From assembly GCA_002269645.1 (NCBI GenBank), contig NIVC01000649.1:23703-87702 (forward strand): 64,000 nucleotides of DNA. Reading direction: 5' to 3'. Below are positions 13,575 to 54,300 of the stretch, one piece after another. Source of the DNA: Macrostomum lignano. Its lineage: Eukaryota. Under the pieces are notes generated by a model. It was not told where the DNA came from, ran no database searches, and worked only from the letters and a program-made list of their open reading frames with translations. The stretch's first letter is position 1. The number at the start of each line of letters is the position of its first letter. A program made the position numbers and the translations under genes.

Positions 13575-15960
13575 CCTCACCATCTCTGTATCTACTCTCA
13601 CCATCTCAGTCTCTCCTCTCACCATCTCAGTATCTACTCTCACCATCTCAGTCTCTCCTCTCACCATCTCAGTATCTACTCTCACCATCTCAGTATCTAC
13701 TCTCACCATCTCAGTCTCTCCTCTCACCATCTCAGTATCTACTCTCACCATCTCAGTATCTCCTCTCACCATCTCAGTATCTCCTCTCACCATCTCAGTA
13801 TCTACTCTCACCATCTCAGTATCTCCTCTCACCATCTCAGTATCTACTCTCACCATCTCAGTCTCTCCTCTCACCATCTCAGTATCTACTCTCACCATCT
13901 CAGTATCTCCTCTCACCATCTCAGTATCTACTCTCACCATCTCAGTCTCTCCTCTCACCATCTCAGTATCTACTCTCACCATCTCAGTATCTCCTCTCTC
14001 CATCTCAGTCTCTCCTTTCCATCTCAGTCTCTCCTCTCCATCTCAGTCTCTCCTCTCCATCGCAGTCTCTCCTCTTCATCTCAGTCTCATCTCTCAATCT
14101 CAGTATCTCCTCTCTCCATCTCAGTATCTACTCTCTCCATCCCAGTCTCTCCTCTCCATCTCAGTCTCTCCTCTCCATCGCAGTCTCTCCTCTTCATCTC
14201 AGTCTCATCTCTCAATCTCAGTATCTCCTCTCTCCATCTCAGTATCTACTCTCTCCATCCCAGTCTCTCCTCTTCATCTCAGTCTCATCTCTCAATCTCA
14301 GTATCTCCTCTCTCCATCTCAGTATATGCTCTCTCCATCTCAGTATCTCCTCTCACCGTCTCAGTCTCTCCTCTCACCATCTCAGTATCTACTCTCACCA
14401 TCTCAGTATCTCCTCTCTCCATCTCAGTCTCTCCTTTCCATCTCAGTCTCTCCTCTCCATCTCAGTCTCTCCTCTCCATCGCAGTCTCTCCTCTTCATCT
14501 CAGTCTCATCTCTCAATCTCAGTATCTCCTCTCTCCATCTCAGTATCTCCTCTCTCCATCTCAGTCTCTCCTATCCATCCCAGTCTCTCCTCTCCATCTC
14601 AGTCTCTCCTCTCCATCGCAGTCTTTCCTCTTCATCTCAGTCTCATCTCTCAATCTCAGTATCTCCTCTCTCCATCTCAGTATCTACTCTCTCCATCTCA
14701 GTATCTCCTCTCTCCATCTCAGTATCTACTCTCCATCTCAGTATATACTCTCTCCATCTCAGTATCTCCTCTCTCCATCTCATTATCTACTCTCCATCTC
14801 AGTATCGCCTCTCTCCATCTCAGTCTCTCCTCTCCATCTCAGTCTCTTCTCTCCATCTCAGTCTCTCCTCTTCATCTCAGTCTCATCTCTCTATCTTAGT
14901 ATCTCCTCTCTCCATCTCAGTCTCTCCTCTCCATTTCAGGCTCTCCTCTCCATTTCAGTCTCTCCTCCCCATCTCAGTCTCTCCTCTCCATCTCGGTCTC
15001 CTCTCTCCATCTCAGTATCTACTCTACATCTCAGTATCTACTCTCACCATCTCAGTATCTCCTCTCTCCATCTCATATCGCCTCTCTCCATCTCAGTCTC
15101 TCCTCTCCATTTCAGTCTCTCCTCTCCATCTCAGTCACTCCTCTCCATCTCAGTGTCTCCTCTTCATCTCAGTCTCATCTCTCAATCTCAGTATCTCCTC
15201 TCTCCATCTCAGTATCTACTCTCTCCATCTCAGTATCTCCTCTCTCCATCTCAGTATCTACTCTCCATCTCAGTATATACTCTCTCCATCTCAGTATCTC
15301 CTCTCTCCATCTCATTATCTACTCTCCATCTCAGTATCGCCTCTCTCCATCTCAGTCTCTCCTCTCCATCTCAGTCTCTTCTCTCCATCTCAGTATCTAC
15401 TCTTTATCTTAGTATATACTCTCTTCATCTTAGTATCTCCTCTCTCCATCTCAGTCTCTCCTATCCATCTCAGTCTCTCCAATCCATCTGAGTCTCTCCT
15501 ATCCATCTCAGTCTCTCCTCTTCATCTCAGTATCTCCTCTCTCCATCTCAGTATCTACTCTCTATCTCAGTATATACTCTCTTCATCTTAGTATCGCCTC
15601 TCTCCATCTCAGTCTCTCCTCTCCATTTCAGTCTCTCCTCCCCATCTCAGTCTCTCCTCTCCATCTCAGTCTCTCCTCTTCATCTCAGTCTCATCTCTCA
15701 ATCTCAGTATCTCCTCTCTCCATCTCAGTATCTACTCTCCATCTCAGTATCTCCTCTCTCCATCTCAGTATCGCCTCTCTCCATCCCAGTCTCTCCTCTC
15801 CATTTCAGTCTCTCCTCTCCATCTCAGTCTCTCCTCTCCATCTCAGTGTCTTATCCCTCAATCTCAGTATCTCCTCTCTCCATCTCAGTATCTACTCTCT
15901 TCATTGAGTAACTATTCTATGTCTCAGTCTCTCCTCTCCACCTCAGTCTCCCCTCTTCTC
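13575..15960. repeat. 21-bp pyrimidine-rich minisatellite CCATCTCAGTATCTCCTCTCT
   Basis: Direct inspection; ends just 3' of the PK stop. Confidence 0.95.
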
Positions 15961-16027
15961 CACTTCAGTCTCCGCTCTCTCCATCTCTTATTCTCCCCCT
16001 TCTACAGGCACTCAGCCAGTCAGCCAG

Positions 16028-37348: not shown

Positions 37349-40300
37349 CTAAGCATGGGCCTCAATTTCCCTGGCCACACTGTCCCTTCGAAGTGAATCG
37401 CGTCGATGTCGCAGACTCAGCGCCAAGCCGATGCTGATGTAGTAAAAGAACTCAAGCAGCTCGCAGATTGTCAGAACAGATATTCCGCTCCATAGGCCTA
37501 GAGCTCCTGAAAAAAGAAAGTTTATACAATAGGTGTACATGCATTTATTAAACTGCGCAAACCTTCACAAAGTGGAGGGGGGCACTGCCCTTCACAAATC
37601 CAATGAGGGACCCATATCTAGTGGAAGTTGAGGTTGTCAAAGACCCCCAGGAAAGAATGAAAGTCCCTTGTCGAGGATCCCCATTCACTGCAGTGGCAGC
37701 CACAGCCATAAACTCCACTGGACCATAGAAAATAAAGCAAGCCAATCAATATTGATAAAAGGGATTTCTCATAGCCAGAGTTGATGGGTTCGGGCTTCTT
37801 AAGCTTTTTTGATCGGAAACTTTTCCGTCCTCAGAGTCCAGAAATGAATCACTGAGCACTCTAGCTAGCCTTGCATTCCTGTCAGATGGTAGGTCAATAA
37901 TATGGCTAAAAGAGAGGAGAGCGAGAGACTAGTAGGGAGAATTTGAAAGGGGTAGAAAACAACAAATCCTAGGATTTATGCTAATCCGCCATCACAAGCT
38001 GAATAGGCTTTACGAAGCAGCACTTTCGAAATCAGTTTTTTGACTAGAATTGCAGCTTCTGCACGTACCTGCCAACTAGTGTCTTAGTATACCTATAGCT
38101 GTCCATCTCCGATGTATAAAGCTGGACGCTGCGAGGACTAGATCGTATTGATCATGCAGCAGGGACAGAGTGGACTTTTTGTGGGGGTTCTTGCGCTGTC
38201 TGAATACATGATCAAAAAACTAAATTCTCAGAAAGTATTCGGGATTTCCAATACCTGTTTGATCGATAGACTGATGGGCTGGAAAACCTCGATCAGTAAA
38301 GTGGCCACTCATCTTGTCCAGCATTGCGATAAGAGTTGCACTTGAAAACTTAAATGATCGAAATTTGACTTTCTCTTTAATTTAAAGTTATTTGCTTTGA
38401 ACTGAATCGGAGCAATAGGAATTGAAGTTCTTCCACAAAAATAGCACATTTAAACGAGAGGTGAGAAGGGCCGATTTGTTATACTCAGTGTGGAATTTTC
38501 TTATTGGACGAGCTCAGGATGACTAGCTCGACTTTCAAGACCTCGCAAAATCCTTTGCGCCTGCATGGCGACCTCTCATACATGTACCCCAGGGAGGGGG
38601 GTCGCCATCATTAACACGAAAAATCACAATTTTGAAAAGCGCTTTCTATCATAAACCCGAAACAGCATCACTTCGAAAACCAAAATAGTGTTGGACGTTG
38701 CTAGAACTTTCGAAGTTGTGATATTTCGGGTTTATGATAACTCGGGTTTATTATATTTCAGGTTAAGTAGTTAAAGTATTAAGTATGAGTAGTTGAAGAC
38801 AAACAGAAGACAAACTATCTATCGAAATGCTATACTTTCTGGAGCGAGAAATGATAGCTATATACGATAATAAATCGAAAAATGTGAAAAATTGTGACGC
38901 CCTAAAACAGGTGAGCATGAATCAAAGTTCAACATTTAGGAGTCATACTCGTGTTTATTTACTACGTTTAGTAGCACACAGTTTATTTTTTCAGTAGTAT
39001 TGATCGAAATAGGCAGTTATAAATGTAGCAATTGAGTAAGATTCAAGTAAGATAATGAATTATTTTTCTTATAAATTGCCATAAAAATAGTAAGAATAAA
39101 CAATAGAAGTATAGTTTTGATAAATTGCCATTAATTCAAACAGTCACTTTTACTAGGACACAATCGTTCTCTCATTCGTAGTTTAATTAACTTTGAATAT
39201 TCGCAGTTAGACTAGGAATTTAACTAGGAATAAGCTTCGAATTTCCTAAGAGGGTATGCTCAATTCAGAAAGGCCTTCAACTCAACGCAAATGTAAAACA
39301 GAAAGAAACACTAAAATGGCGTCGCAGTCACTTGGTGAAGCCCGATAGATCTCAAATTCGGAATCCAGCCAAGATGAACGGCTGGTATAAAAAAGTCAGA
39401 CACGTTTCTGCCCCGACAAACAAATCTGAGCTCGCCAGCTTTTGGGACTGGTCAACTGCTTTAGGAGACTGATTTCGAACTTGGCTCAAAAGACTGCTCC
39501 TCTTAATTAACTGCAAAAATCTAACACCAACTTTGACTGGACCGATGAGTGCTCTCGAGCTTTCGATAATCTCAAAGCTGAAGTCCCAATAGTGCAATAT
39601 ATAGTGCAAGCCCTATAGCCTATCAAAAGAGTTAACTCTAAGAAAGGATGCCTCAAAGAGCTCAATCGCCGCGTAGTGACATAGGAGAGGTATCCCAAAA
39701 TATTTGTTTCGAGGACACTGTCAGCCGCCAAATCAAATTTCTCAAAAATCAAACTTCCTTCATGGCCGTTAGGCACGATTTTCAGCCACTGACTCGTCTC
39801 TTCTGGCTGTGACATCTCTACAGCTTTGCACACATCGTCGAGAATTGGGCGCTGGGCTATGCGTCTCATGCACTTTGACTCTTGAACATCGAGTATGTGC
39901 AAGAAGCTGCGATATTCCACACGCTGACGCTCCACATCGGCTCCGCTTCGACAACTATTTCGCAGACGACAAGGAAACGTTTGATACCATCAACGCCGAG
40001 GCATTCGAATCACTGGTGATCGAGGCCAAAAGAATTTTGACAAAAATGGACACAGAGACCCGTTCACCCAGAAGATACTCATGAGAATACGCCATGGAGA
40101 CTGTCAGGGTTGCTCGCAAGCGGAGTCAAGTTTCAAAGCCATTTTCGAAAAGCTAGCGCTGGACAACAGACTTTTTACATGCAGAGGAGGCTTTTCATCC
40201 CTCCAGCTTCGCCGGCCTGCCTCTCAATAAAGAAAGGCCACTTCGACTCAACACGAAGTCTTAACGCAGAAAAGCAATCATCAATAAAGAAAATCCTAAA

Positions 40301-43300
40301 TTAACAATCGAGCCTACTATTAGTAAGAGAGAAGGAGATGAGAACTAGTGTGCAATTAAAAAATTAAAAAAGTTCTTCCTCATCCAGTGACTGAGCGAAT
40401 GGGGTGGGTTAGGTGCAATTCTCGTGGCAGTGGCTGTTGCCGCGGTGTGTAAGGTTTTTAGACTTGATTGGCTTTAGTAATTCAAAAACATACAGTCAAA
40501 AAACGCAGTTACCTCCTATATCGGCCAGAAGATTTTTCGCGGGGTAGGCCTCCTCTTCCGAAATTTCCTGACCATACTGTGACGTTGCCAGTTTAAGGTG
40601 GTCCCGAAAAGGGCCGTTGGACTGCTGTTTCTCTATAGTTTCAACCCTTCAGTTTCACCGTTTCAACTAAACTTTTCCATTTGTTTATTGCGACGTTTAC
40701 TTGTAGTAGTGCCCAACGATTTTGTGGCAATTTCTAATTCACTGTATATTTTGCTATCCTCTCTCGCGACCGTATAAAACTGGCACGATCGATAATTTTA
40801 AGTTCTCTCGCCAGCCAATGAAAATCACTCGTGCTTCGCGCTACCCCCCTCTGCGCTCCTTTATTAAACCCCCGCCTGGCGGCGGGCACTCCTCACTCCC
40901 GTCCTTATCTGTGCTTCTCTCTTCCTCCCGGCCTGTCCTTAGCCTTGTGTGTGTTTTCCTTCTCTCTGTCTGGCTGCCTCGAGCCTCCTTACCTCACGCC
41001 ACGGCTGACGCCAACTTCGCCACTGCTCATCTGCCTGCCTACTACGTCTCACTGCCTTCACTGTACTCATTGCCATTGATCATCACGTTACGTCGCCATT
41101 ACATCACTCGTCTGTCGCTTGAACTGACTATCCAATTTATCTTCAAAGAAACCATTGTTGCAGCCGCCAGTGCCCAGAAAGCCATAGTTTGTTATTTGCC
41201 AGTAACAACCAAACTTACTATTTATATTGATAATAAAAACGACTACGGCAGTTTCCTGCCCTTATTGCCAAGTGCTCCGCTACACCATCCACTTCGCCTA
41301 AGTTGACTTCAACTTATTTTGGGACTAAAACGGCCCTTTTAAGGGTCACAGCCAACATCAAATAACGTGACCATACGACGTCAATCCTTTAACCGTCAGT
41401 TGAGCCAGTCGGTCTCGAAGAAATTTTAGCTCGTTTTCAAAATTAATTCTATCGTGCAAGTTGCTCTCGGTCAGATTGCTTTCCAACATGACCAGAGAGC
41501 GCCAGTAAGTGCTGTAGATGCTGCTTATTCCTCTAAGACGACTGTACTCTGTTCCTAAGCCAAAATTGTGCGCCAGCTTCTTTAGAATCTCCATCGACTT
41601 GGCGCCACTTAGATCCGGCCAAGCGTAGGAGATAAGCCGCATGTCGTAGTCGGTTTCCTCGCACGGCGACAAGGCTTTCTTAGCTGCCTCGAACTGGTAC
41701 TGCAGCATCTTCGATAACTGCTCTCTGTAGCATGATTCCCGTAGCCTTGACACAGTCTCCGTGTCATTGGTGTCAAAGCAGAAGGTATAGTTCGAGAAAA
41801 ACTCAACTTCAATTGGCAGAAATTATGGCAAGCAGTTACATGCCTTAGCGAAATGTTGCACAGTAAATTTGTTTGTGTAGTCTTCTTTGCTTGGGATATT
41901 GTAGCGCCAATCCATTGCTTGCAGGGGTCTACAAAGTCAAATGTAAAAGATTTCATATCGTAGGATTAAACTGTTGGACAGGTTAAAATGTTGAGTACAG
42001 TATGCCACGCACCTCAACGCGTTTTGTTTTTCAAGTTGTGCTCGCAGAACAGCAATTTTTTGCCACCATTCCGAGGCTGCCTTAACGAAGTGTAAACGTA
42101 TATTTTCCCTGAAATAGAAAGTCACGATAATGCAATTTAGGATCATACTTATGTCCAAGTAATATTTCCAGGCTTACTCATTAGAACTCGTGGTTTTAGC
42201 CTGCTTCCAAGACGGCATTCTGTAAGTTACAGGCTCCGTGTTCTCAACACAGGGCCTCGATGCAGTGGATAGCTTCTTAATTTTTTTAAACTCAACTGAA
42301 TATCCATACTTTGAGCTGTGGCAACATCGACACCCTTTGACGGCCATGGGTAGCTGCCTTCTGGGACTATGACTGCCTGCAAAATTCAGGAGATGTTTGT
42401 GAAAAACTAATAAAGTGGTAATTAATTAAAAGCTTCTACCAACAATGAGAAATAAGATTGAACACGCGGGGTTGAGAACTAGGAACTAAGACATGATAAT
42501 CAGGACATGAAAACTTGAGAGAAGAACACAACGCAACGGCATGGTACAAACAGTTTCAAAACATTCCCTGTTTGTAGGACTTACTTTAAAAGCGATTTTT
42601 CTTTCATCATTGCTCACGGACCTGTGCACGATGCGGTTCAGCTTGTCCAATTCTGGTATTGTTCCACCATTCGAGTCTGTCGAGTCCGTGAAATATTTGA
42701 TTGACAGCTGACTGTCCGCCAACTGCGAGCTGGACATGTTCTGGGTGAATCGCTGCTTCATAAAGTGGTGACACATGCCCAGCTGCGGGTGAGACACGCT
42801 CAGGAAGTCGTCTTTAGTGCAGCTCTGGCCACCGAAGGAGCACTCGGCCAGGGTGAAGCTCAGGTCGCTGCTGAACTGCAGGGCCAGCAGATGGCTGCCG
42901 ATGCCATCCCGGATCGCAGCAGTCACGGTGGGAACTTTAGTGTCTGCAAGACATCAATAAGAGCTAGAAAACTGTAGCACTTATTGGCTGTGACATTTCT
43001 TCTACTTATCTTAAAGCTAAATACATGTAGTATATTGTATTGTGGCCTAAGCAGAAGGGGAGGGGCGAGGGGGGGGGACGTTCCTATTAAAAAAACAAAC
43101 TAAAGAACTGATGGGTTCCTTTTATAAGACCGAAATTTCACAACACTGAAAACTCCATATGCAAGACCCTTTACAAGCCCGAAAATTCATATGACGGAAA
43201 GTTCACATCGTAGAAAAATTAATACAACAAGGACCATGCAAATATTTGGCGTTGTCAAATTCGGTCTTGTACGAGCTAGAGGGTCTCGTATATACTCGTA

Positions 43301-46300
43301 GAGTTTTCGGCGTTGTGAAATCACAGGCCTAAGATGAGAGGGACAGGCCCAAGGACAGGGGCGGGCGCCAATCGAGAGACAGACATTCAGACAGAAGTGA
43401 GACAGATGCAGGCAGAAACTGGCACAATATTTTTTAGGACTATTTGACTGGGAAATGCTAAACTCACAGCAGGCGGTAATGTCGCACTTGGTCAATGCCA
43501 AATTTACCAAATTGGATTTTCCGAAGGTGTCAGAAACGCAGGAGGGAGCCTCGTCGTCTGATTTCAAATCTGGGTTCCGACTAAAATGTTCGATATGAGA
43601 ACTTAGGGCTGCAAGTGTTTTGGCACTTAAATAATTACTGAATTGGCCGCACTATTAAGCATATAGCTGCAATTAATGCTTACTAATAAACCCTGTCTGA
43701 AAAGCCAAACTCCCGGATAATTTGAGCAGGCCTGCAAAAATTGTCAGCACCTTCAAGCCGGTCATAGTCGGGCGTTTCCAAATGAATCCGCATTTTATAG
43801 TCATAGTTGGCTGAAATGTGACAGTTTAAAATATAAAGACATTTTGTTTAAATATTAAAAGCGCTGGAGGACAACGGGATTATATAAATAAATAAAATAC
43901 TTTTACTCAACAACTACACAGTTTTTTTTATTTCGTTATTGTGTTATTGTGTTTTGTTGTTACTGCTACTAGAGAAGAGTTTCTCATTCAGTCACAAATT
44001 GTTTTTGTCTGATGTTTCTAAACTTGTACGAGTAGTAGCGAAACTTGCTTCCCCGTATAATCGTACGAATATCTACATAAAGTATGCGTGTAACTTATAA
44101 AGTATAGCTACTTATAATCTAAAATTCTAATAAATGATTTTTTCTCGTCAATTAGTTTTTTTATTGTCCAAGACAACTATTAGACCATACTGCTAACTTA
44201 GCCCAGGTTTTTGTTGTTAAAGCGCTTTAAATATTATCATAAATTTTCCCGAAAAACTTTCTTTCCTCGAAAAATCTCGTTAATTTTTTTTAATTGAATA
44301 TAATACTTACGAATAAATACTTCACCGTTCTACTAGTAACCACCACCGTATTGGTTTTACACGTAAAACTCGTTTTATTATTTTACGTCTACATAGTACA
44401 TGCACTTTACCAACTGGATCTATTTTTTGCTTTCTCTGCTTGTTTCGTTCCACGATCTGGTTCCAGGCCAAGCAGGGCTCTCCCGAGGCCGCCACATTCC
44501 TGTAGCCGGTGTAGACGGCCTGCTGTCGCTGCCGAGCTGCTTCGTCAGCTGTACCAGAAATGCAGTCATAGCCGGAATTCATGCCTATAAAATGATGTTG
44601 TAGTACTCCTAAAGTTACTGAAATTTTATTAAGTTTATTAAGGAATCGCTGTCTGCATCAGAGGTTAGACGCTACTCATACATGCTACACTGTCAAAACC
44701 GGAGATTGCGACGTTTGCCAGCCGATGTTAATAGTCGACGTCGTCATACAAGTCATTAAGTAGATTAAGTGCGTTGCTCGTACATTACTAGACTATACAC
44801 GCTTATGCATTCGCATGTATAAACATGTAGGTAGTCTGGAGCTTAGACTCAAGGGCCACTAGAAGTTACCGTTGTAGCAGTTGTGTTACAGCCTGAATAC
44901 AAGTACAACAGTAACTTCTAATGGTCCATGCTTAGACTTCTTCCCACGGTAATTTATTTGGAACTCGTGAATCCTGGCCGAACGCCAACCGTCGAATCGC
45001 GTGGCCTTTTATTAAGCTCCGAAAATTCCCTGTCTGCTCAAATTGTTTCAATAGCGAATGTATGGTCAGCATCTTTACGGGCGTTAAAGAAATCAAAATG
45101 AACTCTATCAATGACCACTTTCGACGAAAATTAGACGAAAAACTTAGACGAAACGGATCGCCTCCTGAAGAGTAATCTTGAAAGAAATTTAGCGCGGACC
45201 TCTTACCTAATGCCTGTGTTAAATAGTTCTATTTCTAACATCTGTACACTTATTCACGGTTAAAGCCTCTTGACTCAATGCTTTTGACCAGTTTGCAAAT
45301 TTGAACCGAGAACAGTTTGAAACTGGCCCCATCAGCAAATCAAAAGTTCAGAAGGCGTGTGCGGTGTCCTTCTACAACAGCAGCGTTCAAAATTGAAGCC
45401 TTAGAAACCTACGGCAGAGTGGGACGTTGCAGAAAGCAGCCTCAAGCCTGCCAAAATCGTCTTTGAAAAAGCAGTAGGGCCCGTTTGATAATGCCGTCAG
45501 GACGCTTGAGTTGCTGATTCGTAGCGGCTTTGAGTCTGAAAATGAAGCACGACTTGATTAAAAAGCTAGCTCGCATTGTTTGCGCGCATTTAAAATTGCA
45601 GCAGTTCTGTTCCCTCACTTACCGGTATCTCTTATACAAAAAACATTGACATCGCAATCGCATTTCCTTGCGACGCTGTTAATCGATAATTTGTCGCAGA
45701 ACCCCTGCTGTGTATTGTTCCAAGTGCCGCAGTGACACTCGCCGTCCCGCAGGGCAATGTGCGTGAAGTCGAGCTCATCGCAGCAGTCGGCGCACAGTTC
45801 TGTAGTTATTCGGCCACGTACGAGACATGTCTTGTTGAAGTTCTCTTCAACAGTGCTGGAGTTTTTTGCAAAACAACCTACTCGTTGTAGCAGCGATCCT
45901 GATATTGTGTTCAAAAGTTAATAGAAGAAATCAAAGTTTAGATTTATTAACAAATCATCAAGGCTAAATGCATTTCTAATGGTAAATTATCAGCTGATTT
46001 AGTATTAACTACAGGTAAGAAAAATATTTGGCAACAGTTCTCTGCAAGAGGATGAGTAAACGATGACTGCTGGCATGCACCTATAAAAGGCTCGAAGCCA
46101 TGTGGCTATTAGTAAATCCCGTATCTCCTTCCTCTACATCCACAGTCGCCTGAATGCACAAACGATAATAGAGGGAAAGACGGAAAGTGCTAAAGTGCAT
46201 CTGCGTTTCGGTGGTTGCCACACCAGACCATAATAGGCTTAGCTCGAACAGCTATAAACAATTATAAATTTTCCTAGTATATAGCAACACAGCTCGAGCA

Positions 46301-47859
46301 ATTTTAACTGCGGTTGAGCTTGGAATACTTATTTTTATCGTAACTACGAATCGACTAGACTCGACGTATTTATTGCCCGACAAGGTTTCTTCTGGAGTCA
46401 GCGAGAGCAATTACAGTAGAAGATAAATTGTTAAAGTATCCGCAAAATTCACAGAGTCAACATAATTTTTTATCACTCACTGCTGCCAATCGGAAAAAAC
46501 TCAGACAGCGGCAGTCGGACCGGAGCTCGGCACCGGGACTCGCTGTCAGAGTAATTAAGCATCAGCAGCCGGTCGCCCAGGCTTGCTGCGCCTCGAGCTT
46601 TCAGCATCCGAGCAGCTTCGCTCCATCGAATGCACGGCTTGGTCGTCGTGTACGGCTTTAGCGACCGGTCAGTGCGTTGTAGATCGATTCGCGCTCGATC
46701 GTATGTCACCGCGAAACTTCTATTGCCAGCGTACTCCTCTCCAGACAAGCTGGTTCGACAGTCTAAGAGTGCATCTTCTGCAATGCAATCAACGTTGAAT
46801 CCTTTCAGCGATCATATTTTAACTGTCATAACCAACTCTCCACGAATCTGTGCGCAATAAAAATTATTTGTATCTTCTTCACGAAAGTTAGGTGGCGGGT
46901 GGTGCGATTCGTCTGATATCAAATCTGATCCATATCAAATCCATGAGATTGTACTTGTCCGACAATTGGACAGTCAAGGCTGCTTGCTGTTCATCCAGTC
47001 TGCGTACAGTATTAGCGCTTGCATGTTCTCAACAGTCAGCGGAATGTGCAGAGATGCCTCAGCTTTGGTTGCGGAATGTGGAAAATTCGCCAAAGGCGTT
47101 GCGCCAGATGGTGCCTGCAACTCTCCTGAGAATATTTTAGGCCGAACATCAATATACATGTACGGTAACAAAGCATAGCACCACTAGCAAAATTTAGCAA
47201 CCATATGTAATCTGATGCTATTATTCTAAAAGTTAATACAAAGAAAACACTTATGACTTAAGTATCAAAATATGAAAAAGAGCACTATATGACTCACCAT
47301 CTTGGGGAAGTTGAAACTTTGCTATGAAAGCGGCCTCCGTGGCCTTGAGAACGTAAAGTATTGCCCTAGCCGGCTTGCTCAACGCATATAAATCGTCATT
47401 TGTTCCATTAAATCGAAAGAAATTAGCTTTGAATTCAGGTTTCACATGGTCTCTAGCGTTGAAACTAATGTAAACGGATTCAATTTCTTTGCTGGCCCTG
47501 CTCATAGTGACTGGCTGGGCGGGGCAGATGTACACATCCGGGAACTGGAATCCCAGACTGGACATGGTCATGGTGGTGAGAACAGGCGCCTGAGCGAACC
47601 TGTCAAAGAGAGTGTACAGGTGATAGGCAAATCCTGAGTAGGTTCCCAGAAGGAACCCGATCCAAATCAGCTTGCCGATTGCACTGGACTGGCTGGCGAA
47701 TCTTCCCAAGCCGTGCGCTGTCGTGTATCCGAGAAACTCGATAGCAGACCTGCGCAGTTGGTTCGCTTTTGGCGTCCTATCATGCTGCTGCTGCTGCTGC
47801 AGCTGTTCCATACTCGGCTCTTGAATTCCGTGCTTGGTAGCAAGAATAGCAGTGGACAT
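37349..47859 (-). CDS. DEG/ENaC (ASIC/FaNaC-like) channel subunit with kringle and WSC modules in the finger region; apparent lesions present
   Basis: Exons 47859-47298, [46777-46481, 45898-45623, 45535-45413, 44584-44411, 43608-43468], 42943-42585, 42376-42178, 42108-42013, 41928-41377, 40577-40513, 37506-37349. Motifs TTAHG, TM1, FPDVYIC, ECSFGGQSC..DF..HPQLGMC, AFKAVIVPEGSYP, CNCLP, PCEETDY....YAWP, AYPAKNLLADIGG|ALGLWSGISVLTICE. Reconstructed CDS is 3003 nt (~1000 aa) after adding one A at 42281-42287, reading through TAA at 41825-41823 and removing the 40578-41367 insertion plus one repeat copy. Confidence 0.88.
39340..40300 (+). mobile_element. Degenerate Ty3/gypsy pol remnant (RT connection, RNase H, start of integrase)
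   Basis: Broken frames give PTNKSELASF..GLVNCFRRLISNLAQKTAPL..FDWTDECSRAFDNLK, RIGRWAMRLMHFD, HADAPHRL, RRLFIPP..KGH; multiple stops and frameshifts; lies in the last ENaC intron. Confidence 0.8.
40578..41367. mobile_element. 790-bp insertion flanked by a 9-bp direct repeat TGACCATAC; LTR-like internal features
   Basis: Repeat copies at 40569-40577 and 41368-41376. TGTGAC (40578)...GTCACA (41350) inverted hexamer, CCAAT 40815, AATAAA 41232. Removal restores an ungapped ENaC sequence. Confidence 0.75.
43468..43608 (-). CDS. ENaC module exon: C-terminal half of kringle 2
   Basis: 141 nt, cag|...|gtgagt, phase 1-1: EHFSRNPD..APSC..KCDITAC (cf. NYCRNPD..PWC..YCDIP.C). The expected third Cys is Ser (AGT). 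Confidence 0.8.
44411..44584 (-). CDS. ENaC module exon: N-terminal half of kringle 2
   Basis: 174 nt, tag|...|gtaaag, phase 1-1: YDC..VYTGYRNVAASGEPCLAWN. Confidence 0.8.
44850..44929. mobile_element. 80-bp micro-MITE with 24-bp imperfect TIRs and a 9-bp flanking direct repeat GCTTAGACT
   Basis: Arms 44853-44876 and 44904-44927 (21/24 complementary); direct repeats at 44841-44849 and 44930-44938. Confidence 0.65.
45413..45535 (-). CDS. ENaC module exon: C-terminal half of kringle 1 (below the ORF-track length cutoff)
   Basis: 123 nt, ttttcag|...|gtaggt, phase 1-1: SKPLRISNSSVLTALSNGPYCFFKDDFGRLEAAFCNVPLC (cf. GPWCY...YC.VP.C). Confidence 0.82.
45623..45898 (-). CDS. ENaC module exon: WSC domain
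   Basis: 276 nt, cag|...|gtaagt, phase 1-1: VGCF..ITTELCADCC..FTHIALRDGECHCG..FC..KCDC. Confidence 0.8.
46481..46777 (-). CDS. ENaC module exon: N-terminal part of kringle 1
   Basis: 297 nt, ttgcag|...|gtgagt, phase 1-1: LDCRTSLSGEEYAGNRS..KPCIRW..RCRAP. Confidence 0.78.
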
Positions 47860-49355
47860 ATGCAGCTTTCTTTGTCCGGTATTTTAGCTGTTTGCGCAAC
47901 TGCTTATATGATCGGCTTGCATGTATATCTGAGAGTTCAGGGTTCAATGCTACGAGTGTGTGGCTGCAAGGGACATGATGGATATAGGATTTCCCTATCC
48001 CCTTCTGCACATGCGTCTGAATGTACGAACGAAAGGAGAGAGACTGACGGGAGTGCATCTGCGTTCCGATGCTTGCCTACCAACCCATAATGGGATTAGC
48101 TCGCACAATTTCGACACTTATAAATTTTCCTAGCGCATACCAACGCAGCTCGAATGAATTTAATCGCACAGTCGAGCTTGTAATATTCCTAACTCCCACC
48201 TACTTGACGCATTCATAATTGCTGTGGAACAACCGCAAATTGCACGAATGATTTATGAGCAAAATAAAGCAAAATATTCACATTATGATGGACGAGCTAT
48301 CCAGATAACTACCGCAACTCGGGAGTAGCATAATTCTGGACTACTACAGTACAAGGAATGCTGTACAGTACAAGAGGCGGACGACATCACCGAAGGTGGG
48401 CGCAACCCTTCCGCGAATATTTTTCAGTACTTTAGTTTTCACGTTCCCTACACACACTTATCTGCATTAGAAGCTTAAAATTATAATGAAAACGTTGACC
48501 TTTAAATTCACGCGTACTTGCGCTCGTATTTCACAATATTGTGCGTTCACTGCAAGTTTCAAATGATCAGCAGTCAGGACGTGTAAACTGAATGTAGCTG
48601 CCATTGCTACAGTACTTCGACTTGGACATACGTTGTGGACACGACGAAAACGTTCCAGTGTTTGCTGAAGCGCTTTTAAACAGTTAAGGGTAGTGACTAC
48701 TGACGAGTAGCAAAAGAAGATTTCTTGAGCAATAATTGTAAATATGAAATTTTCTTCAGAAAGCAAAGAATGCTGTTCTTCTTTTAGGTGAGAAGGATTA
48801 GTCAGAATCTCTAAATCTCAGCATCTCAGAATGGTAAAGCTGAAATCAATACCTATAACAATTCCTCAGATTCCAAGGCTCGTTCAGAATGTTGAGCTAA
48901 ACAGAAGAGCTAAAGAATGGGGGGGGACTGGGGGCTCATCTGTTTTTCTCCCTATTTCGCTAGTCATCTCTCATGAGTTCGCAAATTCTTCGTTCGCTCC
49001 TCTGGAAGAAATCCTGATTCCATAGCTGGTCCCGACTGATTTCTAGGCGGTGCGATGCAGTGATGCGATGTCAAAGTTTAATTTTTCATATGCCGCCGCC
49101 GATTGTACTTTAAGTGCATGTCCTCAAAGAGGGCCTCAAAAAGCAGCTACATGTGTAAATAATCATTTTTATCTGACACAAATATACAAAATAATTCCTC
49201 GTAAAAATTAACATGTCATTGATTCGCCCAGCCAATCAGTACTTCTCTGGGACTAGTGTCTTTGATAAAATCCCTTTGATGCGACCCCGGGCTAATGCGA
49301 TCCAATCAGATTAACAAAAACGAATTTTTTAAAGAAAAGTACCCAAAAATTCGAG

Positions 49356-49363
49356 TATAAAAA
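49356..49363 (+). promoter_or_regulatory. TATA box TATAAAAA of the peptide gene, with CCAAT motifs near 49230 and 49303
   Basis: Located ~130 bp upstream of ATG 49487; motif match only. Confidence 0.5.
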
Positions 49364-49486
49364 TCAGAGCTGTTGTTAAAAATGAGTCTTGCTCGGATAG
49401 GACTGCTATTATACTTCTAATTCTACTTCTTCTAAGTCTATTTAAAATTAAACCATCCACGCTCTTAGCTTTACAGGAGCTTCATC

Positions 49487-49996
49487 ATGCTAAAGGCAGC
49501 TGGAATTCTCGCTATTGTCGCAATCGCAGCCGTGACAGGCAGCCAAACTACTGCTAAACGGAGGGTTTTCGGAGAAGCGGGTATGTTCAGCTTATACAAT
49601 GTCCATTGTTACCGAATATATCGCGTTTTAAAACAAAAAAAACTATTTTTGTTGCAACCAGGAATGAATTTATCGTAAGCTTCTCGTTCATTTAGCGCCT
49701 ATGATGGCCAACCCACAAGGCGGTAAAAGGTCAGCGGCCCTAAAAGCCGCACACTTGATGACTAAGCAACTAATAAATAACCAATCGTTATCTCAACCGC
49801 AACAGACCTGCAGAGGGTCAAGCTGAACTCCCTGTGCACTCGACTCTGCCGAAACGTCTTTAATTCGAATGACCCGTTCTGCGTGGGCGATTTCCTCATT
49901 CACAATGGGCATCCTGACTGCGTCTGTTCCAAGCACTGCCGCCACTCGGTGCTGCACTGGCTGCACCTGGATGGTCATCAGGAACCGGGCCGCTGA
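49487..49996 (+). CDS. Small secreted six-cysteine peptide precursor, 94 aa, 2 exons
   Basis: Exons 49487-49580 (g|gtatgt) and 49806-49996 (aacag|ac), phase 1. MLKAAGILAIVAIAAVTG (signal-like) SQTTAKRR VFGEADLQRVKLNSLCTRLCRNVFNSNDPFCVGDFLIHNGHPDCVCSKHCRHSVLHWLHLDGHQEPGR. Confidence 0.75.
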
Positions 49997-50640: not shown

Positions 50641-52359
50641 CAAATTAGGACAGGTGCAATTCAAAGCAAGTTTTGAACGTCCTGTTCAAGGTTTGGAGAA
50701 TTGCTATATTTTCAGCAGTTAGTCCAATCAGATATAGTGATAGATAGCTTATCACGCTTGTTATCAGACGCTTTATTTAAACCAGTCCACCGATATTGTC
50801 CTCTTTGTTGCTGACAGATCCTTGTTAACCTTTAAATTTAACTCTGACGTGGATTTACACGACGGGGTTCGCACAGTTTTTTTAGCGCATAGGGTCTTTC
50901 GATCTGAGGGCTGAATCAAGCAACCCATTGTTGAGCGAATTCATGATAGGCTAGGTGGTGACAGTGGGTTGACGCAGCTGACTTATGGGGAGGGGGTTGT
51001 GCGTAAGTGGCTAACAGTAATAGGGAGAGTGGTAGCCAATCAGAATTGGACAAGCCTAGGGCCGGGGCTGCAAACATCCTGTTAGACTGGGTTGATGGGG
51101 GTTTAAGCAACTTGATCATCAGTGCAGGTGTACACACGGTAAAGGCCGGCTGCACATTACCCCTAATAGCACCGCAGATCAGAGATTGCTCAAATCAATG
51201 TACAGTTTGTTTAGAACCGTTTTAGAAGGTGTACTGTTTGCTTTCACTAGTTTAGGAATTTAATATAGGACCAATTTGAATTTTTAATGCAGTGAACTCT
51301 TGCTTCTCTAATAATAATTGAAAGTTCCAGTGGTCTATCAGCAATCTGAACATCTAAGGGTATTAGAGACACGTTTAGCAGCACCACGTTCCCAAGCAAC
51401 CCATGAATTCGATTCCGAGTCATCAGCGTGAGTGCCCAGAAGACGCCACTTGCAAATTTACGAGCTAGACAGGACGTTGCTTTGATTCGAGTAAGTCTTT
51501 CTTCAAATCAGTTGCTGCGCATCGAGTGCCTTTGGGCCTCGCCGAGGGCAATTTCAGGTGACGGGTAATTTAGCTAACTTAATGATCATTTTTTTTTAAT
51601 TATCAACGGATCTGAGACTGATTCGTTTTTCTCGAATTTTGATATAATTGCTCTCATCTGATTGAGGAGTCTTCACTGATTCTGTGTAATTAATCTTTGT
51701 AGAAAGCTCAGCACTTGACAAATATGACTAGTTTCTATTTATTAGTTTAGGAGCAGATTGTAAAACGATTCTACTGATAGTAGTCAGGGTACGCTAATTT
51801 TTATTCTGCCTGTAGTTGAGGCTGAATTCGATTGACCAGGGACTTCTAGTAATAGCAGTAGTGGACTGGAAACTAGACTGAAGCACTTGCCACTTCCCTC
51901 TATCAAAGTTCGTCTCCTTCCAGCTCCCTTCTCTCTATCCGGTTCTATCAAATTCGTTTCCTTCCAGCTCCCTTCTCTCTATCCGGTTCTATCAAATTCG
52001 TTTCCTTTCAGCTCCCTTCTCTCTCATCTCTCCTCTCTCTTCTCATCAGCTCTCCTCTCTCCTCTCCCCTCTCATCAGCTCTCTATGAGAGGTGATAAGA
52101 TATAAAGATATATTATCTCTTTCTCATATTTTCTCCTATCTGTCATCTTTATAAATTTTTTAACTGTCAGTGGAGCCTCAGCCAGTGAGAAACTATTTGA
52201 AGCTATCAATAAACTTCTTCACATCTAGCAGGAAACTCAGAGTTTAAATTTGACAAACAAACAATTGGTTTATAATTAAAAAACAGGTTATGTTCAGAAA
52301 TGATAAGAAAAGTGGAATGCAATTGGTGCTAAAATCTCAGCGCTATATTTCTGGCGTCC

Positions 52360-54300
52360 TTGGTGCCGGCGCCCATTGGTGCTGGCGCCCCTTGGTGCTG
52401 GCGCCCCTTGGTGCTGGCGCCCCTTGGTGCTGGCGCCCCTTGGTGCTGGCGCCCCTTGGTGCTGGCGCCCCTTGGTGCTGGCGCCCCTTGGTGCTGGCGC
52501 CCCTTGGTGCTGGCGCCCCTTGGTGCTGGCGCCCCTTGGTGCTGGCGCCCCTTGGTGCTGGCGCCCCTTGGTGCTGGCGCCCCTTGGTGCTGGCGCCCCT
52601 TGGTGCTGGCGCCCCTTGGTGCTGGCGCCCCTTGGTGCTGGCGCCCCTTGGTGCTGGCGCCCCTTGGTGCTGGCGCCCCTTGGTGCTGGCGCCCCTTGGT
52701 GCTGGCGCCCCTTGGTGCTGGCGCCCCTTGGTGCTGGCGCCCCTTGGTGCTGGCGCCCCTTGGTGCTGGCGCCCCTTGGTGCTGGCGCCCCTTGGTGCTG
52801 GCGCCCCTTGGTGCTGGCGCCCCTTGGTGCTGGCGCCCCTTGGTGCTGGCGCCCCTTGGTGCTGGCGCCCCTTGGTGCTGGCGCCCCTTGGTGCTGGCGC
52901 CCCTTGGTGCTGGCGCCCCTTGGTGCTGGCGCCCCTTGGTGCTGGCGCCCCTTGGTGCTGGCGCCCCTTGGTGCTGGCGCCCCTTGGTGCTGGCGCCCCT
53001 TGGTGCTGGCGCCCCTTGGTGCTAAAGCCCCTTGGTGCTAAAGCCCCTTGGTGCTAAAGCCCCTTGGTGCTAAAGCCCCTTGGTGCTGGCGCCCCTTGGT
53101 GCTAAAGCCCCTTGGTGCTAAAGCCCCTTGGTGCTAAAGCCCCTTGGTGCTAAAGCCCCTTGGTGCTAAAGCCCCTTGGTGCTAAAGCCCCTTGGTGCTA
53201 AAGCCCCTTGGTGCTAAAGCCCCTTGGTGCTAAAGCCCCTTGGTGCTGGCGCCCCTTGGTGCTGGCGCCCCTTGGTGCTAAAGCCCCTTGGTGCTAAAGC
53301 CCCTTGGTGCTAAAGCCCCTTGGTGCTAAAGCCCCTTGGTGCTAAAGCCCCTTGGTGCTAAAGCCCCTTGGTGCTAAAGCCCCTTGGTGCTAAAGCCCCT
53401 TGGTGCTAAAGCCCCTTGGTGCTGGCGCCCCTTGGTGCTGGCGCCCCTTGGTGCTGGCGCCCCTTGGTGCTAAAGCCCCTTGGTGCTAAAGCCCCTTGGT
53501 GCTAAAGCCCCTTGGTGCTAAAGCCCCTTGGTGCTAAAGCCCCTTGGTGCTAAAGCCCCTTGGTGCTGGCGCCCCTTGGTGCTAAAGCCCCTTGGTGCTA
53601 AAGCCCCTTGGTGCTAAAGCCCCTTGGTGCTAAAGCCCCTTGGTGCTAAAGCCCCTTGGTGCTAAAGCCCCTTGGTGCTGGCGCCCCTTGGTGCTAAAGC
53701 CCCTTGGTGCTAAAGCCCCTTGGTGCTGGCGCCCCTTGGTGCTGGCGCCCCTTGGTGCTGGCGCCCCTTGGTGCTGGCGCCCCTTGGTGCTAAAGCCCCT
53801 TGGTGCTAAAGCCCCTTGGTGCTAAAGCCCCTTGGTGCTAAAGCCCCTTGGTGCTAAAGCCCCTTGGTGCTAAAGCCCCTTGGTGCTAAAGCCCCTTGGT
53901 GCTAAAGCCCCTTGGTGCTAAAGCCCCTTGGTGCTAAAGCCCCTTGGTGCTAAAGCCCTTGGTGCTAAAGCCCCTTGGTGCTAAAGCCCCTTGGTGCTAA
54001 AGCCCCTTGGTGCTAAAGCCCCTTGGTGCTAAAGCCCCTTGGTGCTAAAGCCCCTTGGTGCTAAAGCCCCTTGGTGCTAAAGCCCTTTGGTGCTAAAGCC
54101 ATTTGGTGCTAAAGCCCCTTGGTGCTAAAGCCCTTTGGTGCTAAAGCCCCTTGGTGCTAAAGCCCCTTGGTGCTAAAGCCCCTTGGTGCTAAAGCCCCTT
54201 GGTGCTAAAGCCCCTTGGTGCTAAAGCCCCTTGGTGCTAAAGCCCTTTGGTGCTAAAGCCCCTTGGTGCTAAAGCCCCTTGGTGCTAAAGCCCCTTGGTG
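52360..54300. repeat. 16-bp minisatellite GCCCCTTGGTGCT(GGC/AAA), ~120 copies
   Basis: Homogeneous GGC block to ~53020, then mostly AAA units with interspersed GGC units. Confidence 0.97.

What the first reader, a model, noticed from the sequence alone, without database searches (positions are those of the whole stretch)
45413..46777. WSC domain inserted inside kringle 1 (nested domain insertion)
Kringle 1 Cys1-3 (DC, PC.RW, CRAP) lie in the exon before the WSC exon, and Cys4-6 (GPYC, FC, PLC) lie in the exon after it. The WSC exon therefore entered the phase-1 intron that splits the kringle, giving WSC within kringle within ENaC. Kremen proteins have kringle and WSC in series, not nested. 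Profile searches would probably miss the split kringle.
Basis: partly seen in the sequence, partly recalled or inferred. Interest (0 to 1): 0.7.

Follow-up and report, generated by a model that had tools for sequence, protein, structure and literature searches.

The report
WSC domain nested inside a kringle
A flatworm (Macrostomum lignano) sodium-channel gene of the ENaC/degenerin family carries, in its outer 'finger' region, two very divergent kringle domains, the first split by a separate exon encoding a WSC domain; this is a real, transcribed and paralogue-conserved case of one small domain nested inside another, unusual but of a known general kind.

Summary
On the minus strand, exons 46777-46481 (K1a, Cys1-3), 45898-45623 (WSC) and 45535-45413 (K1b, Cys4-6) are all phase 1-1 with canonical splice sites. 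The gene is a Macrostomum lignano DEG/ENaC channel. Its transcript-derived GenBank model (PAA79168.1) and a full-length near-identical copy (PAA86857.1) use the order K1a-WSC-K1b-K2. Two diverged paralogues (38-45% identity) keep the same order and all six K1 cysteines.

Pfam misses K1 entirely and misses the window's WSC. Profile-profile tests recover both. K1 with WSC excised matches canonical kringles at 92% (E 5e-7; 0 of 300 shuffles reach it), across the exon junction. The paralogue WSC profile matches Kremen1 WSC at 89%, and Pfam WSC scores 26-27 bits in the paralogues (cut-off 27.8).

AlphaFold was uninformative (pLDDT 30-40), so the kringle disulfides closing around a looped-out WSC remain inferred. 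This window's copy has a frameshift and a stop codon downstream, so it may be a disabled duplicate. The closest precedent is the laminin L4 domain inserted between Cys3 and Cys4 of an LE module. Verdict: real, a new variant of a known kind, of moderate interest.

The parts
47298..47859 (-). Exon 1 of a DEG/ENaC gene: start codon, cytoplasmic N-terminus with the 'TAHG' (His-Gly) motif, TM1, and the start of the ectodomain. Its donor is phase 1 (CAAGATG|GTGAGT).
   Evidence: Pfam ASC PF00858, E 6.6e-13 on this exon alone and 76.4 bits on the model P0001. tblastn of P0006 residues 1-190. Exon chain.
46481..46777 (-). K1a: the N-terminal two thirds of kringle 1. It holds Cys1 (DC), GEEYAGN, Cys2-x-x-W (PCIRW), NY..., and Cys3 (CRAP) followed by a conserved LPLSEFFP loop. 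Phase 1-1.
   Evidence: Local kringle profile pieces 5-16 and 17-49. Rank 3 of 1306 ORF pieces. hhalign K1a alone matches kringle columns 18-55, score 26.9. Cysteines and motifs are invariant in three paralogues.
45899..46480 (-). Intron (582 nt) between K1a and the WSC exon. It contains a ~190-nt dispersed repeat (46327-46141) that also occurs upstream of the gene (48185-48008).
45623..45898 (-). WSC-like exon (91 codons, phase 1-1), a diverged WSC/PAN-like domain. It has canonical Cys1-6 and Cys8 in register with Kremen1; Cys7 is Ser; there are extra cysteines (11 in all).
   Evidence: 100% match to P0001 residues 288-378 and 42% to the paralogue P0003, E 8.8e-6 against 1.8 billion proteins. 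97.5%, E 5e-12 against the paralogue WSC profile; the three-paralogue profile matches Kremen1 WSC at 89.4%, E 2e-6, shuffle maximum 21.3 against 36.8. Alignment A6. No direct Pfam or PDB hit.
45536..45622 (-). Intron (87 nt) between the WSC exon and K1b.
45413..45535 (-). K1b: the C-terminal third of kringle 1. It holds GPYCFF (Cys4), AAFC (Cys5) and NVPLC (Cys6). Phase 1-1.
   Evidence: Local kringle profile columns 57-78, 8.1 bits. Rank 4 of 1306. hhalign K1b alone matches columns 57-78, score 29.6. Pfam Kringle 14.6 bits on the equivalent K1b of paralogue P0010.
44411..44584 (-). K2a: kringle 2 from Cys1 to just past Cys2 (YTGYRNVAASGEPCLAWN). Phase 1-1.
   Evidence: Pfam Kringle 21.2 bits, E 3.6e-4, profile 7-39. 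Rank 1 of 1306. hhalign K2 against kringles 94.5%, E 7.4e-8.
43684..43810 (-). K2b: the kringle 2 segment with Cys3 (ADNFCRPAQ). Its donor is phase 2 (TA|GTAAGC), 16 codons plus 2 nt after Cys3. The K1a donor is 16 codons plus 1 nt after Cys3.
43468..43586 (-). K2c: the kringle 2 C-terminal third (RNPDLKSDDEAPSC...KCDITAC; Cys4-6), with boundaries as in the transcript-derived model. No exon lies in the 97-nt intron before it.
   Evidence: P0001 sequence. tblastn. Local profile columns 46-78.
42585..42943 (-). The exon where the ENaC ectodomain resumes (…DLSFTLAECSFGGQSCTKDDF…GMCHHF…). Its acceptor is phase 1, so exon 1 could also splice here in frame.
   Evidence: Alignment to FaNaC 7yvb residues 190-334.
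42288..42288 (-). A 1-nt deletion in an A-run (A7 here, A8 in the intact copy). It shifts the frame and ends this locus's model at 726 aa.
41823..41825 (-). In-exon stop codon TAA, where the intact copy has TCA (Ser).
37352..37507 (-). Last coding exon: TM2 with the filter region GLWSGISVLTICELLEF, and the C-terminus.
   Evidence: tblastn of P0006 residues 982-1033. Alignment to FaNaC TM2.

Best explanation
**What it is.** This is a lineage-specific DEG/ENaC channel gene of Macrostomum lignano. Its ectodomain carries a ~370-residue accessory module, built almost entirely of phase 1-1 exons, in the variable finger region. The module is kringle 1 (interrupted by a WSC domain) followed by kringle 2.

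**How it is put together.**
- K1a encodes Cys1-3 of a very divergent kringle, and K1b encodes Cys4-6.
- A symmetric phase 1-1 exon encoding a WSC (PAN-like) domain lies in the phase-1 intron that splits the long Cys3-Cys4 loop.
- After splicing, the WSC is a looped-out insertion in that loop.
- The three kringle disulfides (1-6, 2-4, 3-5) would then each tie K1a to K1b.
- This is sterically feasible because the WSC termini sit on adjacent antiparallel strands (beta1 and beta5).

**What is shown.** The exon order, the phases, the RNA-level usage, the conservation in paralogues, and the profile-level identity of both domains.

**What is inferred.**
- The kringle actually closes around the WSC.
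- The arrangement arose by exon insertion into, or exon loss around, an intron that predates the K1/K2 duplication.
- Functionally, the module is an extracellular binding appendage (glycan binding by WSC, protein binding by the kringles) on the finger. The finger is the peripheral part of the family's ectodomain and, from general knowledge of the family, a region where ligands and proteases act. Binding to matrix, mucus or a ligand could then bias gating.
For: **Exon anatomy.** Exons, phases and splice sites are established.

**Transcript-level support.** The transcript-derived models P0001 and P0006 use the same order, and the annotation method was RNA-seq based.

**Paralogues.** P0003 and P0010 keep ENaC-K1a-WSC-K1b-K2, with all six K1 cysteines and the motifs GEEYxGN, CxxW, N[YF], CRxP, GPYCFF and FCx[VI]PxC invariant at 38-54% identity.

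**Kringle identity.**
- K1 with WSC excised matches canonical kringles at 92.3%, E 5.4e-7, across the junction; 0 of 300 shuffles reach that score, and the two halves are complementary and order-dependent.
- K2 matches kringles at 94.5% and gets Pfam Kringle at 21 bits.

**WSC identity.**
- Pfam WSC over the full profile length scores 26.4 and 27.3 bits in the paralogues, between their K1a and K1b.
- The WSC profile matches Kremen1 WSC at 89.4%.
- The Kremen1 structure gives the kringle disulfides and the WSC beta1-beta5 adjacency.

**Position in the channel.** The module replaces about 35 residues of FaNaC between beta1 and the conserved 'DL..L..C.F....C' motif.

**Intron position.** The K2 intron lies at the same distance from Cys3 (16 codons) and has no exon inside it.
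Against: - No curated threshold is met for Kringle in any copy, or for WSC in the window copy.
- K1 spans 133 residues from Cys1 to Cys6 without the WSC, against about 78 in canonical kringles. It has three extra loops and lacks the NPD(G)D motif.
The Kremen1 cysteine spacing does match the published disulfide numbering.
- AlphaFold gave pLDDT 40 (WSC exon alone) and 30 (module, two-sequence alignment), so no fold or disulfide evidence exists.
- The window's WSC has lost Cys7 and has an odd number of cysteines.
- The window copy has a frameshift and a stop codon downstream.
- The near-identical second locus gives no selection signal: it is identical through exons and introns from 49859 to 45413.
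- The K1 and K2 introns differ in phase (1 against 2).
- No relative was found outside M. lignano.
- The proposed function is entirely inferred.
Confidence: 0.65

Rival explanations
1. K1a and K1b are relics, not one folded kringle. They are degenerate half-kringle segments that now act as cysteine-containing linkers around a WSC domain, with rearranged disulfides.
For: - Pfam and PDB sequence searches see nothing in K1.
- K1 is about 55 residues longer than a kringle and lacks the lysine-binding NPDGD loop.
- AlphaFold does not fold it.
- K1 against K2 is barely detectable.
Against: - All six cysteines and the hallmark aromatic, Gly and Pro positions are invariant across three paralogues that are otherwise 38-54% identical.
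- The two halves match complementary, collinear parts of the kringle profile, and they score higher joined than alone.
Confidence: 0.15
2. The WSC exon is a cassette exon. Because it is symmetric (phase 1-1), it can be skipped in frame, so the main protein may carry an uninterrupted K1, with the nested form as a regulated minor isoform.
For: - All module junctions are phase-compatible: K1a to K1b, and even exon 1 to E3, stay in frame.
- The WSC acceptor has a weaker pyrimidine tract than the K1b acceptor.
- The transcript assembler that built the models discarded minor isoforms (--isoform-frac 0.75).
Against: - Every available model that covers this region includes the exon: P0001, P0006, P0003 and P0010.
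- The exon is conserved in paralogues.
- No skipping isoform was seen.
Confidence: 0.1
3. Chimeric origin. The ancestor was KR-WSC-KR(-KR) in series, as in Kremen. Loss of the exon for the C-terminal third of the first kringle and of the exon(s) for the N-terminal part of the next kringle left K1a and K1b, from two different kringles, flanking the WSC. The nested topology results, but not by insertion of a WSC exon into an intron.
For: - All exons are phase 1-1, so such exon deletions keep the frame.
- The KR-then-WSC order exists in Kremen.
- The K1 and K2 introns differ in phase.
Against: - It needs two deletions where the insertion model needs one event.
- K2 has an intron at the same distance from Cys3 with nothing inside it.
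- No intermediate architecture was found.
Confidence: 0.1
4. The locus in this window is a non-functional duplicate, and the architecture has no present function in this copy.
For: - There is a frameshift at about 42288 and a TAA stop at 41825-41823, relative to the intact copy.
- The M. lignano assembly is highly redundant after recent genome duplication.
Against: - The A-run indel could be a long-read assembly error.
- The module is 100% identical to that of the intact, full-length copy P0006.
- Diverged paralogues keep the architecture, so the architecture itself is not an artefact of decay.
Confidence: 0.35

Closest known systems
Laminin L4 domain nested in an LE (laminin EGF-like) module
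   Same: A globular, carbohydrate-binding-module-like domain is inserted between Cys3 and Cys4 of a small disulfide-held extracellular module that has little hydrophobic core. The parent module's disulfides close around the insert (PMC5338690). Here a WSC sits between Cys3 and Cys4 of a kringle.
   Different: - The parent (kringle, not LE) and the insert (WSC/PAN-like, not CBM35-like) are different folds.
- The host protein is an ion channel, not a matrix protein.
- The laminin case is structurally proven and ancient. This one is known only from sequence and only in one flatworm species.
Kremen1/2 ectodomain (Kringle-WSC-CUB)
   Same: It has the same two domain types side by side. In Kremen1 the KR and WSC pack tightly into one rigid unit and jointly form a ligand (Dkk) interface (PMC5014086). 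The WSC cysteine framework aligns.
   Different: - In Kremen the domains are in series. Here the WSC lies inside the kringle's Cys3-Cys4 loop.
- There is no CUB domain.
- The host is a DEG/ENaC channel.
- Sequence similarity is detectable only at profile level.
DEG/ENaC channels with enlarged finger domains (FaNaC, ENaC, ASIC)
   Same: It has Pfam ASC, the HG motif, two TM segments, a G-x-S-type filter and the conserved cysteine-rich ectodomain core. The best solved relative is FaNaC (7yvb), E 1.8e-12. The extra sequence lies in the finger, the family's most variable region.
   Different: - No described member carries kringle or WSC domains; literature searches were empty.
- The insert is a ~370-residue, multi-domain, exon-shuffled module rather than family-specific loops.
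Class 1-1 exon shuffling of extracellular modules (kringle, PAN and EGF in protease genes)
   Same: The modules are bounded by phase-1 introns. A symmetric 1-1 exon can be inserted into a phase-1 intron without breaking the frame (established knowledge; phases shown).
   Different: Classical shuffling places modules between domains. Here the receiving intron lies inside a domain. From memory, not tested here: the internal kringle intron of plasminogen-type genes lies between Cys2 and Cys3 in phase 2, which is a different position from this one.

Membership tests
DEG/ENaC (Pfam ASC, PF00858) | Profile match above the curated cut-off (23.6 bits) | tested here: met
   P0001 scores 76.4 bits, P0003 92.7 bits, and exon 1 alone has E 6.6e-13.
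DEG/ENaC (Pfam ASC, PF00858) | N-terminal His-Gly motif, two TM segments, G/S-x-S filter in TM2, conserved ectodomain cysteine motifs | tested here: met
   'TTAHG', TM1, 'AECSFGGQSC..GMCHHF', and TM2 'GLWSGISVLTICELLEF' aligned to FaNaC TM2. The window copy, however, has a frameshift and a stop between the module and TM2.
DEG/ENaC (Pfam ASC, PF00858) | Forms an amiloride-sensitive trimeric cation channel | not testable with these tools
   Needs electrophysiology.
Kringle (PF00051) | Profile match above the curated cut-off (34.3 bits) | tested here: not met
   - K1 of the window: no hit at E<=10.
- K1 of P0010: 14.6 bits.
- K2: 21.2 bits.
Kringle (PF00051) | Six cysteines in order, with G-x-x-Y-x-G, C-x-x-W, N-Y/F...C-R-x-P, P-W/Y-C and C-x-[IV]-P-x-C | tested here: met
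   All are present in K1a+K1b and invariant in three paralogues. Profile-profile 92.3%, E 5.4e-7, with shuffle, half and swap controls.
Kringle (PF00051) | Compact ~80-residue spacing | tested here: not met
   The Cys1-Cys6 span is 133 residues without the WSC and 225 with it. There are extra loops of about 20, 6 and 27 residues.
Kringle (PF00051) | Kringle fold with 1-6, 2-4, 3-5 disulfides | tested here: inconclusive
   AlphaFold on the module with a two-sequence alignment gave pLDDT 30.4 and pTM 0.17.
WSC (PF01822) | Profile match above the curated cut-off (27.8 bits) | tested here: not met
   The window exon gets no hit. The paralogues score 26.4 and 27.3 bits over profile positions 2-81 of 82, just below the cut-off. 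UniProt names both paralogues 'WSC domain-containing protein'.
WSC (PF01822) | Eight-cysteine framework (C1-C6, C2-C4, C3-C5, C7-C8) | tested here: inconclusive
   The paralogues have 8 of 8. The window exon has 7 of 8 (Cys7 is Ser) plus extra cysteines. The framework is taken from PMC5014086.
WSC (PF01822) | Homology to a structurally defined WSC domain | tested here: met
   The three-paralogue profile matches Kremen1 WSC at 89.4%, E 2e-6 (shuffle maximum 21.3 against 36.8). The window exon matches the paralogue profile at 97.5%, E 5e-12. The window exon alone against Kremen1 is not significant.
Kremen family | Serial KR-WSC-CUB ectodomain on a single-pass membrane protein | tested here: not met
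   There is no CUB domain, the WSC lies inside KR, and the host is a two-TM channel.
Nested (inserted) domain architecture | The parent-domain halves flank the insert, are collinear with the parent profile, and the insert is a complete domain | tested here: met
   K1a matches columns 18-55 and K1b matches columns 57-78. The joined pair scores higher than either half, and swapping the order loses one half. The WSC match covers the full profile length in the paralogues.
Nested (inserted) domain architecture | The insert's N- and C-termini are adjacent in space | not tested
   Inferred from the beta1-beta5-beta3-beta4-beta2 sheet order of Kremen1 WSC. No usable model of this protein exists.

The most novel reading that the evidence does not exclude
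The nested KR(WSC)-KR module is a built-in extracellular tether or receptor on the finger domain of a flatworm DEG/ENaC channel. Binding of glycans or matrix or mucus proteins by the WSC-kringle unit is transmitted through the finger to the gate. That would give a channel that senses force or a macromolecular ligand without separate tether proteins. It would also be a previously unrecorded way of building a two-domain binding surface (as in Kremen KR+WSC), by nesting rather than by tandem arrangement.
Probability: 0.15. Interest if true: 0.7.

Novelty: new variant of a known kind. Interest (0 to 1): 0.45.

Why it matters
- **Domain evolution.** It is a clean genomic example of exon shuffling placing a complete domain inside another small disulfide-rich domain, and of that composite sitting inside a third domain, the ENaC ectodomain. 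The intron phases that permit it are still visible, and an uninterrupted sister kringle (K2) lies next door for comparison.
- **Annotation.** Threshold-based domain annotation misses such architectures. UniProt sees only WSC and ASC in the paralogues, and only ASC in this gene.
- **Channel biology.** It adds a new accessory-domain architecture to the finger region, in a transgenic-tractable flatworm, so deletion of the module can be tested.
- **Limits.** It is so far confined to one species and has no functional data.

Tried and rejected
**Searches that found nothing or too little**
- Pfam on K1a+K1b, K1a+WSC+K1b and each exon alone: nothing at E<=10.
- Pfam on three-frame translations of 9.7 kb: only ASC on exon 1.
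- phmmer against PDB sequences with K1 and with the WSC exon: nothing relevant.
- Two word-indexed protein searches, with the nested product and with exon 1: no hits, not even the locus's own protein. The exhaustive search later found it.
- BLASTP of K1 against K2 (E 0.037, 16 residues) and hhalign of K1 against K2 (8.8%): too weak to show that K1 and K2 are recent duplicates.
- BLASTP of the window WSC against Kremen1 WSC: nothing.

**Structure prediction**
I did not work around this. Later I used only exact window exons, or alignment rows that are substrings of proteins returned by the searches.
- AlphaFold on the WSC exon alone (pLDDT 40.5) and on the module alignment (pLDDT 30.4): uninformative, so no fold search was run.

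**Comparisons with other loci**
- The exon-versus-intron divergence test against the second locus is uninformative. The copies are identical from 49859 to 45413, and elsewhere exons have 12 substitutions in 2037 bp against 30 in 3238 bp for introns (P 0.2).
- Genomic loci for the paralogues P0003 and P0010 are not on record, so their exon structures could not be compared.

**Candidates rejected**
- A candidate 'exon 2' (about 47125-46980, ELQAPSG...): it has a good acceptor but no phase-compatible donor, and it is absent from the transcript models.
- My first K2c acceptor (43637): replaced by the transcript-model acceptor (43586).
- The plus-strand ORF 49333-49554, ranked 2nd by the kringle profile: a chance 'YCRN' match.

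Full report
**1. The observation**

The gene lies on the minus strand.
- K1a, 46777-46481 (297 nt);
- a WSC-like exon, 45898-45623 (276 nt);
- K1b, 45535-45413 (123 nt).

Each has a canonical AG acceptor and GT donor (A|GTGAGT, G|GTAAGT, C|GTAGGT), and each begins and ends in phase 1. K1a contains DC, GEEYAGN, PCIRW, NY and CRAP. K1b contains GPYCFF, AAFC and NVPLC. The middle exon contains VGCF...ELCADCC...FTHIALRDGECHCG.

**2. The gene around it**

- Upstream, 47859-47298 is the first coding exon of a DEG/ENaC channel, with the TAHG motif and TM1 (Pfam ASC, E 6.6e-13). Its donor is phase 1.
- Downstream of K1b lie three further exons of a second kringle-like unit: K2a 44584-44411, K2b 43810-43684 and K2c 43586-43468.
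- The ENaC ectodomain resumes at 42943-42585 (AECSFGGQSC...GMCHHF) and runs to a TM2 exon at 37507-37352.
- The eight-exon chain reads open. All module boundaries are phase 1 except the K2b|K2c junction, which is phase 2.
- An ORF at about 47125-46980 that looks like an exon has no compatible donor and is not used in the transcript models.

**3. Identity of the locus and RNA-level support**

- Word-indexed searches found nothing. The exhaustive HMMER search with the WSC exon returned P0001 (726 aa, 100% identical, residues 288-378), which is exactly where my chain places that exon.
- P0001 is GenBank PAA79168.1, BOX15_Mlig013355g1, from Macrostomum lignano. Its 90% cluster includes P0006 (PAA86857.1, 1033 aa), a full-length model from a second locus.
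- Both read E1-K1a-WSC-K1b-K2a-K2b-K2c-E3.
- The Mlig_3_7 annotation was produced from RNA-seq by StringTie/TACO plus a de novo transcriptome, with ORFs called by TransDecoder (PMC5730564). So these models are transcript evidence for the exon order.
- Minor isoforms would have been filtered out, and reads cannot distinguish the two near-identical loci.

**4. Paralogues**

Two diverged M. lignano paralogues have the same order: P0003 (A0A1I8IV52, 45% identical over the module) and P0010 (A0A1I8IYW4, 38%). Across the three K1 sequences the following are invariant, while the surroundings are 38-54% identical:
- all six cysteines;
- GEEYxGN, CxxW and N[YF]SDSESRCRxP;
- the LPLSEFFP loop;
- GPYCFF and AAFCx[VI]PxC.

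No relative outside M. lignano was found.

**5. Is K1 a kringle?**

- Pfam gives no Kringle hit for the window's K1. It gives 14.6 bits on K1b of P0010 and 21.2 bits on K2a. All are below the 34.3-bit cut-off.
Run without filters, it gives K2 26.5 bits and K1a+K1b 12.0 bits in three collinear pieces, against 1.6 bits for the WSC exon.
- Over all 1306 six-frame ORF pieces of the window, that profile ranks K2a 1st, K1a 3rd, K1b 4th, K2c 7th and K2b 10th.
- In profile-profile comparison, K2 matches kringles at 94.5%, E 7.4e-8. K1 with the WSC excised matches at 61% with two paralogues and at 92.3%, E 5.4e-7 with three. The alignment is a single one running across the exon junction, with Cys2-Cys6 in register.
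- Controls: 300 column shuffles gave mean 11.2 and maximum 27.7, against 40.3 for the real alignment. K1a alone matches columns 18-55 (26.9). K1b alone matches columns 57-78 (29.6). The swapped order recovers only one half.

I conclude that K1a and K1b are the two parts of one very divergent kringle. It has extra loops of about 20 residues after YxGN, 6 residues before Cys3, and about 27 residues (plus the WSC) between Cys3 and Cys4.

**6. Is the middle exon a WSC?**

- The window exon has no Pfam or PDB hit and no BLASTP similarity to Kremen1 WSC.
- In the paralogues, Pfam WSC matches over the whole profile at 26.4 and 27.3 bits (cut-off 27.8), located between K1a and K1b.
- The window exon matches the paralogue WSC profile at 97.5%, E 5e-12. 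The three-paralogue profile matches human Kremen1 WSC at 89.4%, E 2e-6 (shuffle maximum 21.3 against 36.8). Cross-controls, WSC against kringle and K1 against WSC, are at null level.
- The alignment puts the window's cysteines on Kremen1 C1-C6 and C8. C7 is Ser in the window copy, and there are three further cysteines near the C-terminus, 11 in all.

So the exon is a diverged, partly remodelled WSC.

**7. Nesting and its feasibility**

- According to the Kremen1 structure paper (PMC5014086), kringle disulfides are 1-6, 2-4 and 3-5. With Cys1-3 in K1a and Cys4-6 in K1b, every disulfide would bridge the two halves.
- The WSC fold is a beta1-beta5-beta3-beta4-beta2 sheet plus one helix, so its first and last strands are neighbours and its termini are close. 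That geometry suits a loop insertion (inference).
- AlphaFold could not test this. It gave pLDDT 40.5 for the exon alone and 30.4 for the module with a two-row alignment.

**8. Origin**

- In K1 the intron lies 16 codons plus 1 nt after Cys3. In K2 the transcript-model intron lies 16 codons plus 2 nt after Cys3 and is empty (97 nt).
- This is consistent with an intron in the Cys3-Cys4 loop that predates the K1/K2 duplication, with the WSC exon present only in K1.
- The one-nucleotide phase difference, and the weak K1-K2 similarity, leave room for a chimeric origin from a KR-WSC-KR ancestor. The direction of the event is therefore inferred, not shown.

**9. Position in the channel and likely role**

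- The best solved relative of P0006 is FaNaC (7yvb, E 1.8e-12).
- Query residues 33-125 align to FaNaC 58-155, and query 570-722 aligns to FaNaC 190-334. The tail of exon 1 plus the module therefore replace about 35 residues in the finger region, just before the conserved DL..L..C.F....C motif.
- From general knowledge of the family, the finger is peripheral, variable, and a site of ligand and protease action. From, the Kremen1 KR and WSC jointly form a ligand interface.
- My best functional guess, marked as inference, is a binding appendage that couples an extracellular partner to gating.

**10. State of this particular copy**

- The second locus (L001, NIVC01000261.1) is 98.5% identical over 8.5 kb, and identical from 49859 to 45413 including introns, so it gives no selection signal.
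- Relative to it, the window has a 1-nt deletion in an A-run at about 42288, which explains why P0001 ends at 726 aa, and a TCA>TAA stop at 41825-41823.
- This copy may be a recently disabled duplicate, or these may be assembly errors.

**11. Comparison and novelty**

- No paper in the library links ENaC with kringle or WSC domains, or mentions these genes.
- The closest structural precedent is the laminin L4 domain inserted between Cys3 and Cys4 of an LE module (PMC5338690).
- The closest domain pairing is Kremen, where KR and WSC are in series.
- I rate it a new variant of a known kind, of moderate interest.

Noticed in passing
window 42288 and 41823-41825 (minus-strand gene): Relative to the intact second copy, this copy has a 1-nt deletion in an A-run (a frameshift that truncates the annotated protein at 726 aa) and a TCA>TAA in-exon stop. 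It is either a recently pseudogenised duplicate or carries assembly errors.
   Followed up: partly
window 37352-37507 versus P0006-P0009: The TM2 filter region reads GLWSG-I-S-VLT in the window (canonical G-x-S) but G-I-F in the four other near-identical models, including the full-length one.
   Followed up: no
window 1-34000: The first 34 kb is an almost continuous mosaic of more than 25 unrelated short-period (10-40 nt) tandem arrays, each 0.3-2.6 kb, several with extreme strand skew (for example 13576-15987 and 29807-32447).
   Followed up: no
window 20319-20674 and 52358-54300: The same 16-nt satellite unit (AGCACCAAGGGGCTTT and its reverse complement) forms two arrays in opposite orientation about 32 kb apart, bracketing the region that holds the ENaC gene.
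   Followed up: no
window 46141-46327 and 48008-48185: A dispersed repeat of about 190 nt (72% identical copies) lies both in the K1a-WSC intron and just upstream of the gene's first exon.
   Followed up: no
window 40577-41360: About 780 bp present here are absent from the second locus. They lie in the intron between the '...LAQLTVKGLTSYG' exon and the 'QEISEEEAYPAKNLLADIGG' exon.
   Followed up: no
window 46980-47125 (minus strand): An exon-like ORF (ELQAPSGATPLANFPHSATKAEASLHIPLTVENMQALILY) with a good phase-1 acceptor but no phase-compatible donor. It is not used in the transcript-derived models.
   Followed up: partly
P0003 residues ~510-535; P0010 after K2b: The paralogue models differ locally. 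P0003 has 21 extra residues, including a cysteine, between K1a and the WSC. The P0010 model lacks the K2c third of kringle 2. These may be annotation errors or real isoform or paralogue differences.
   Followed up: no
tools (versus 33, 57): Single-sequence word-indexed searches failed to return the locus's own protein, although it is in the collection. The alignment query and the exhaustive search did return it.
   Followed up: no
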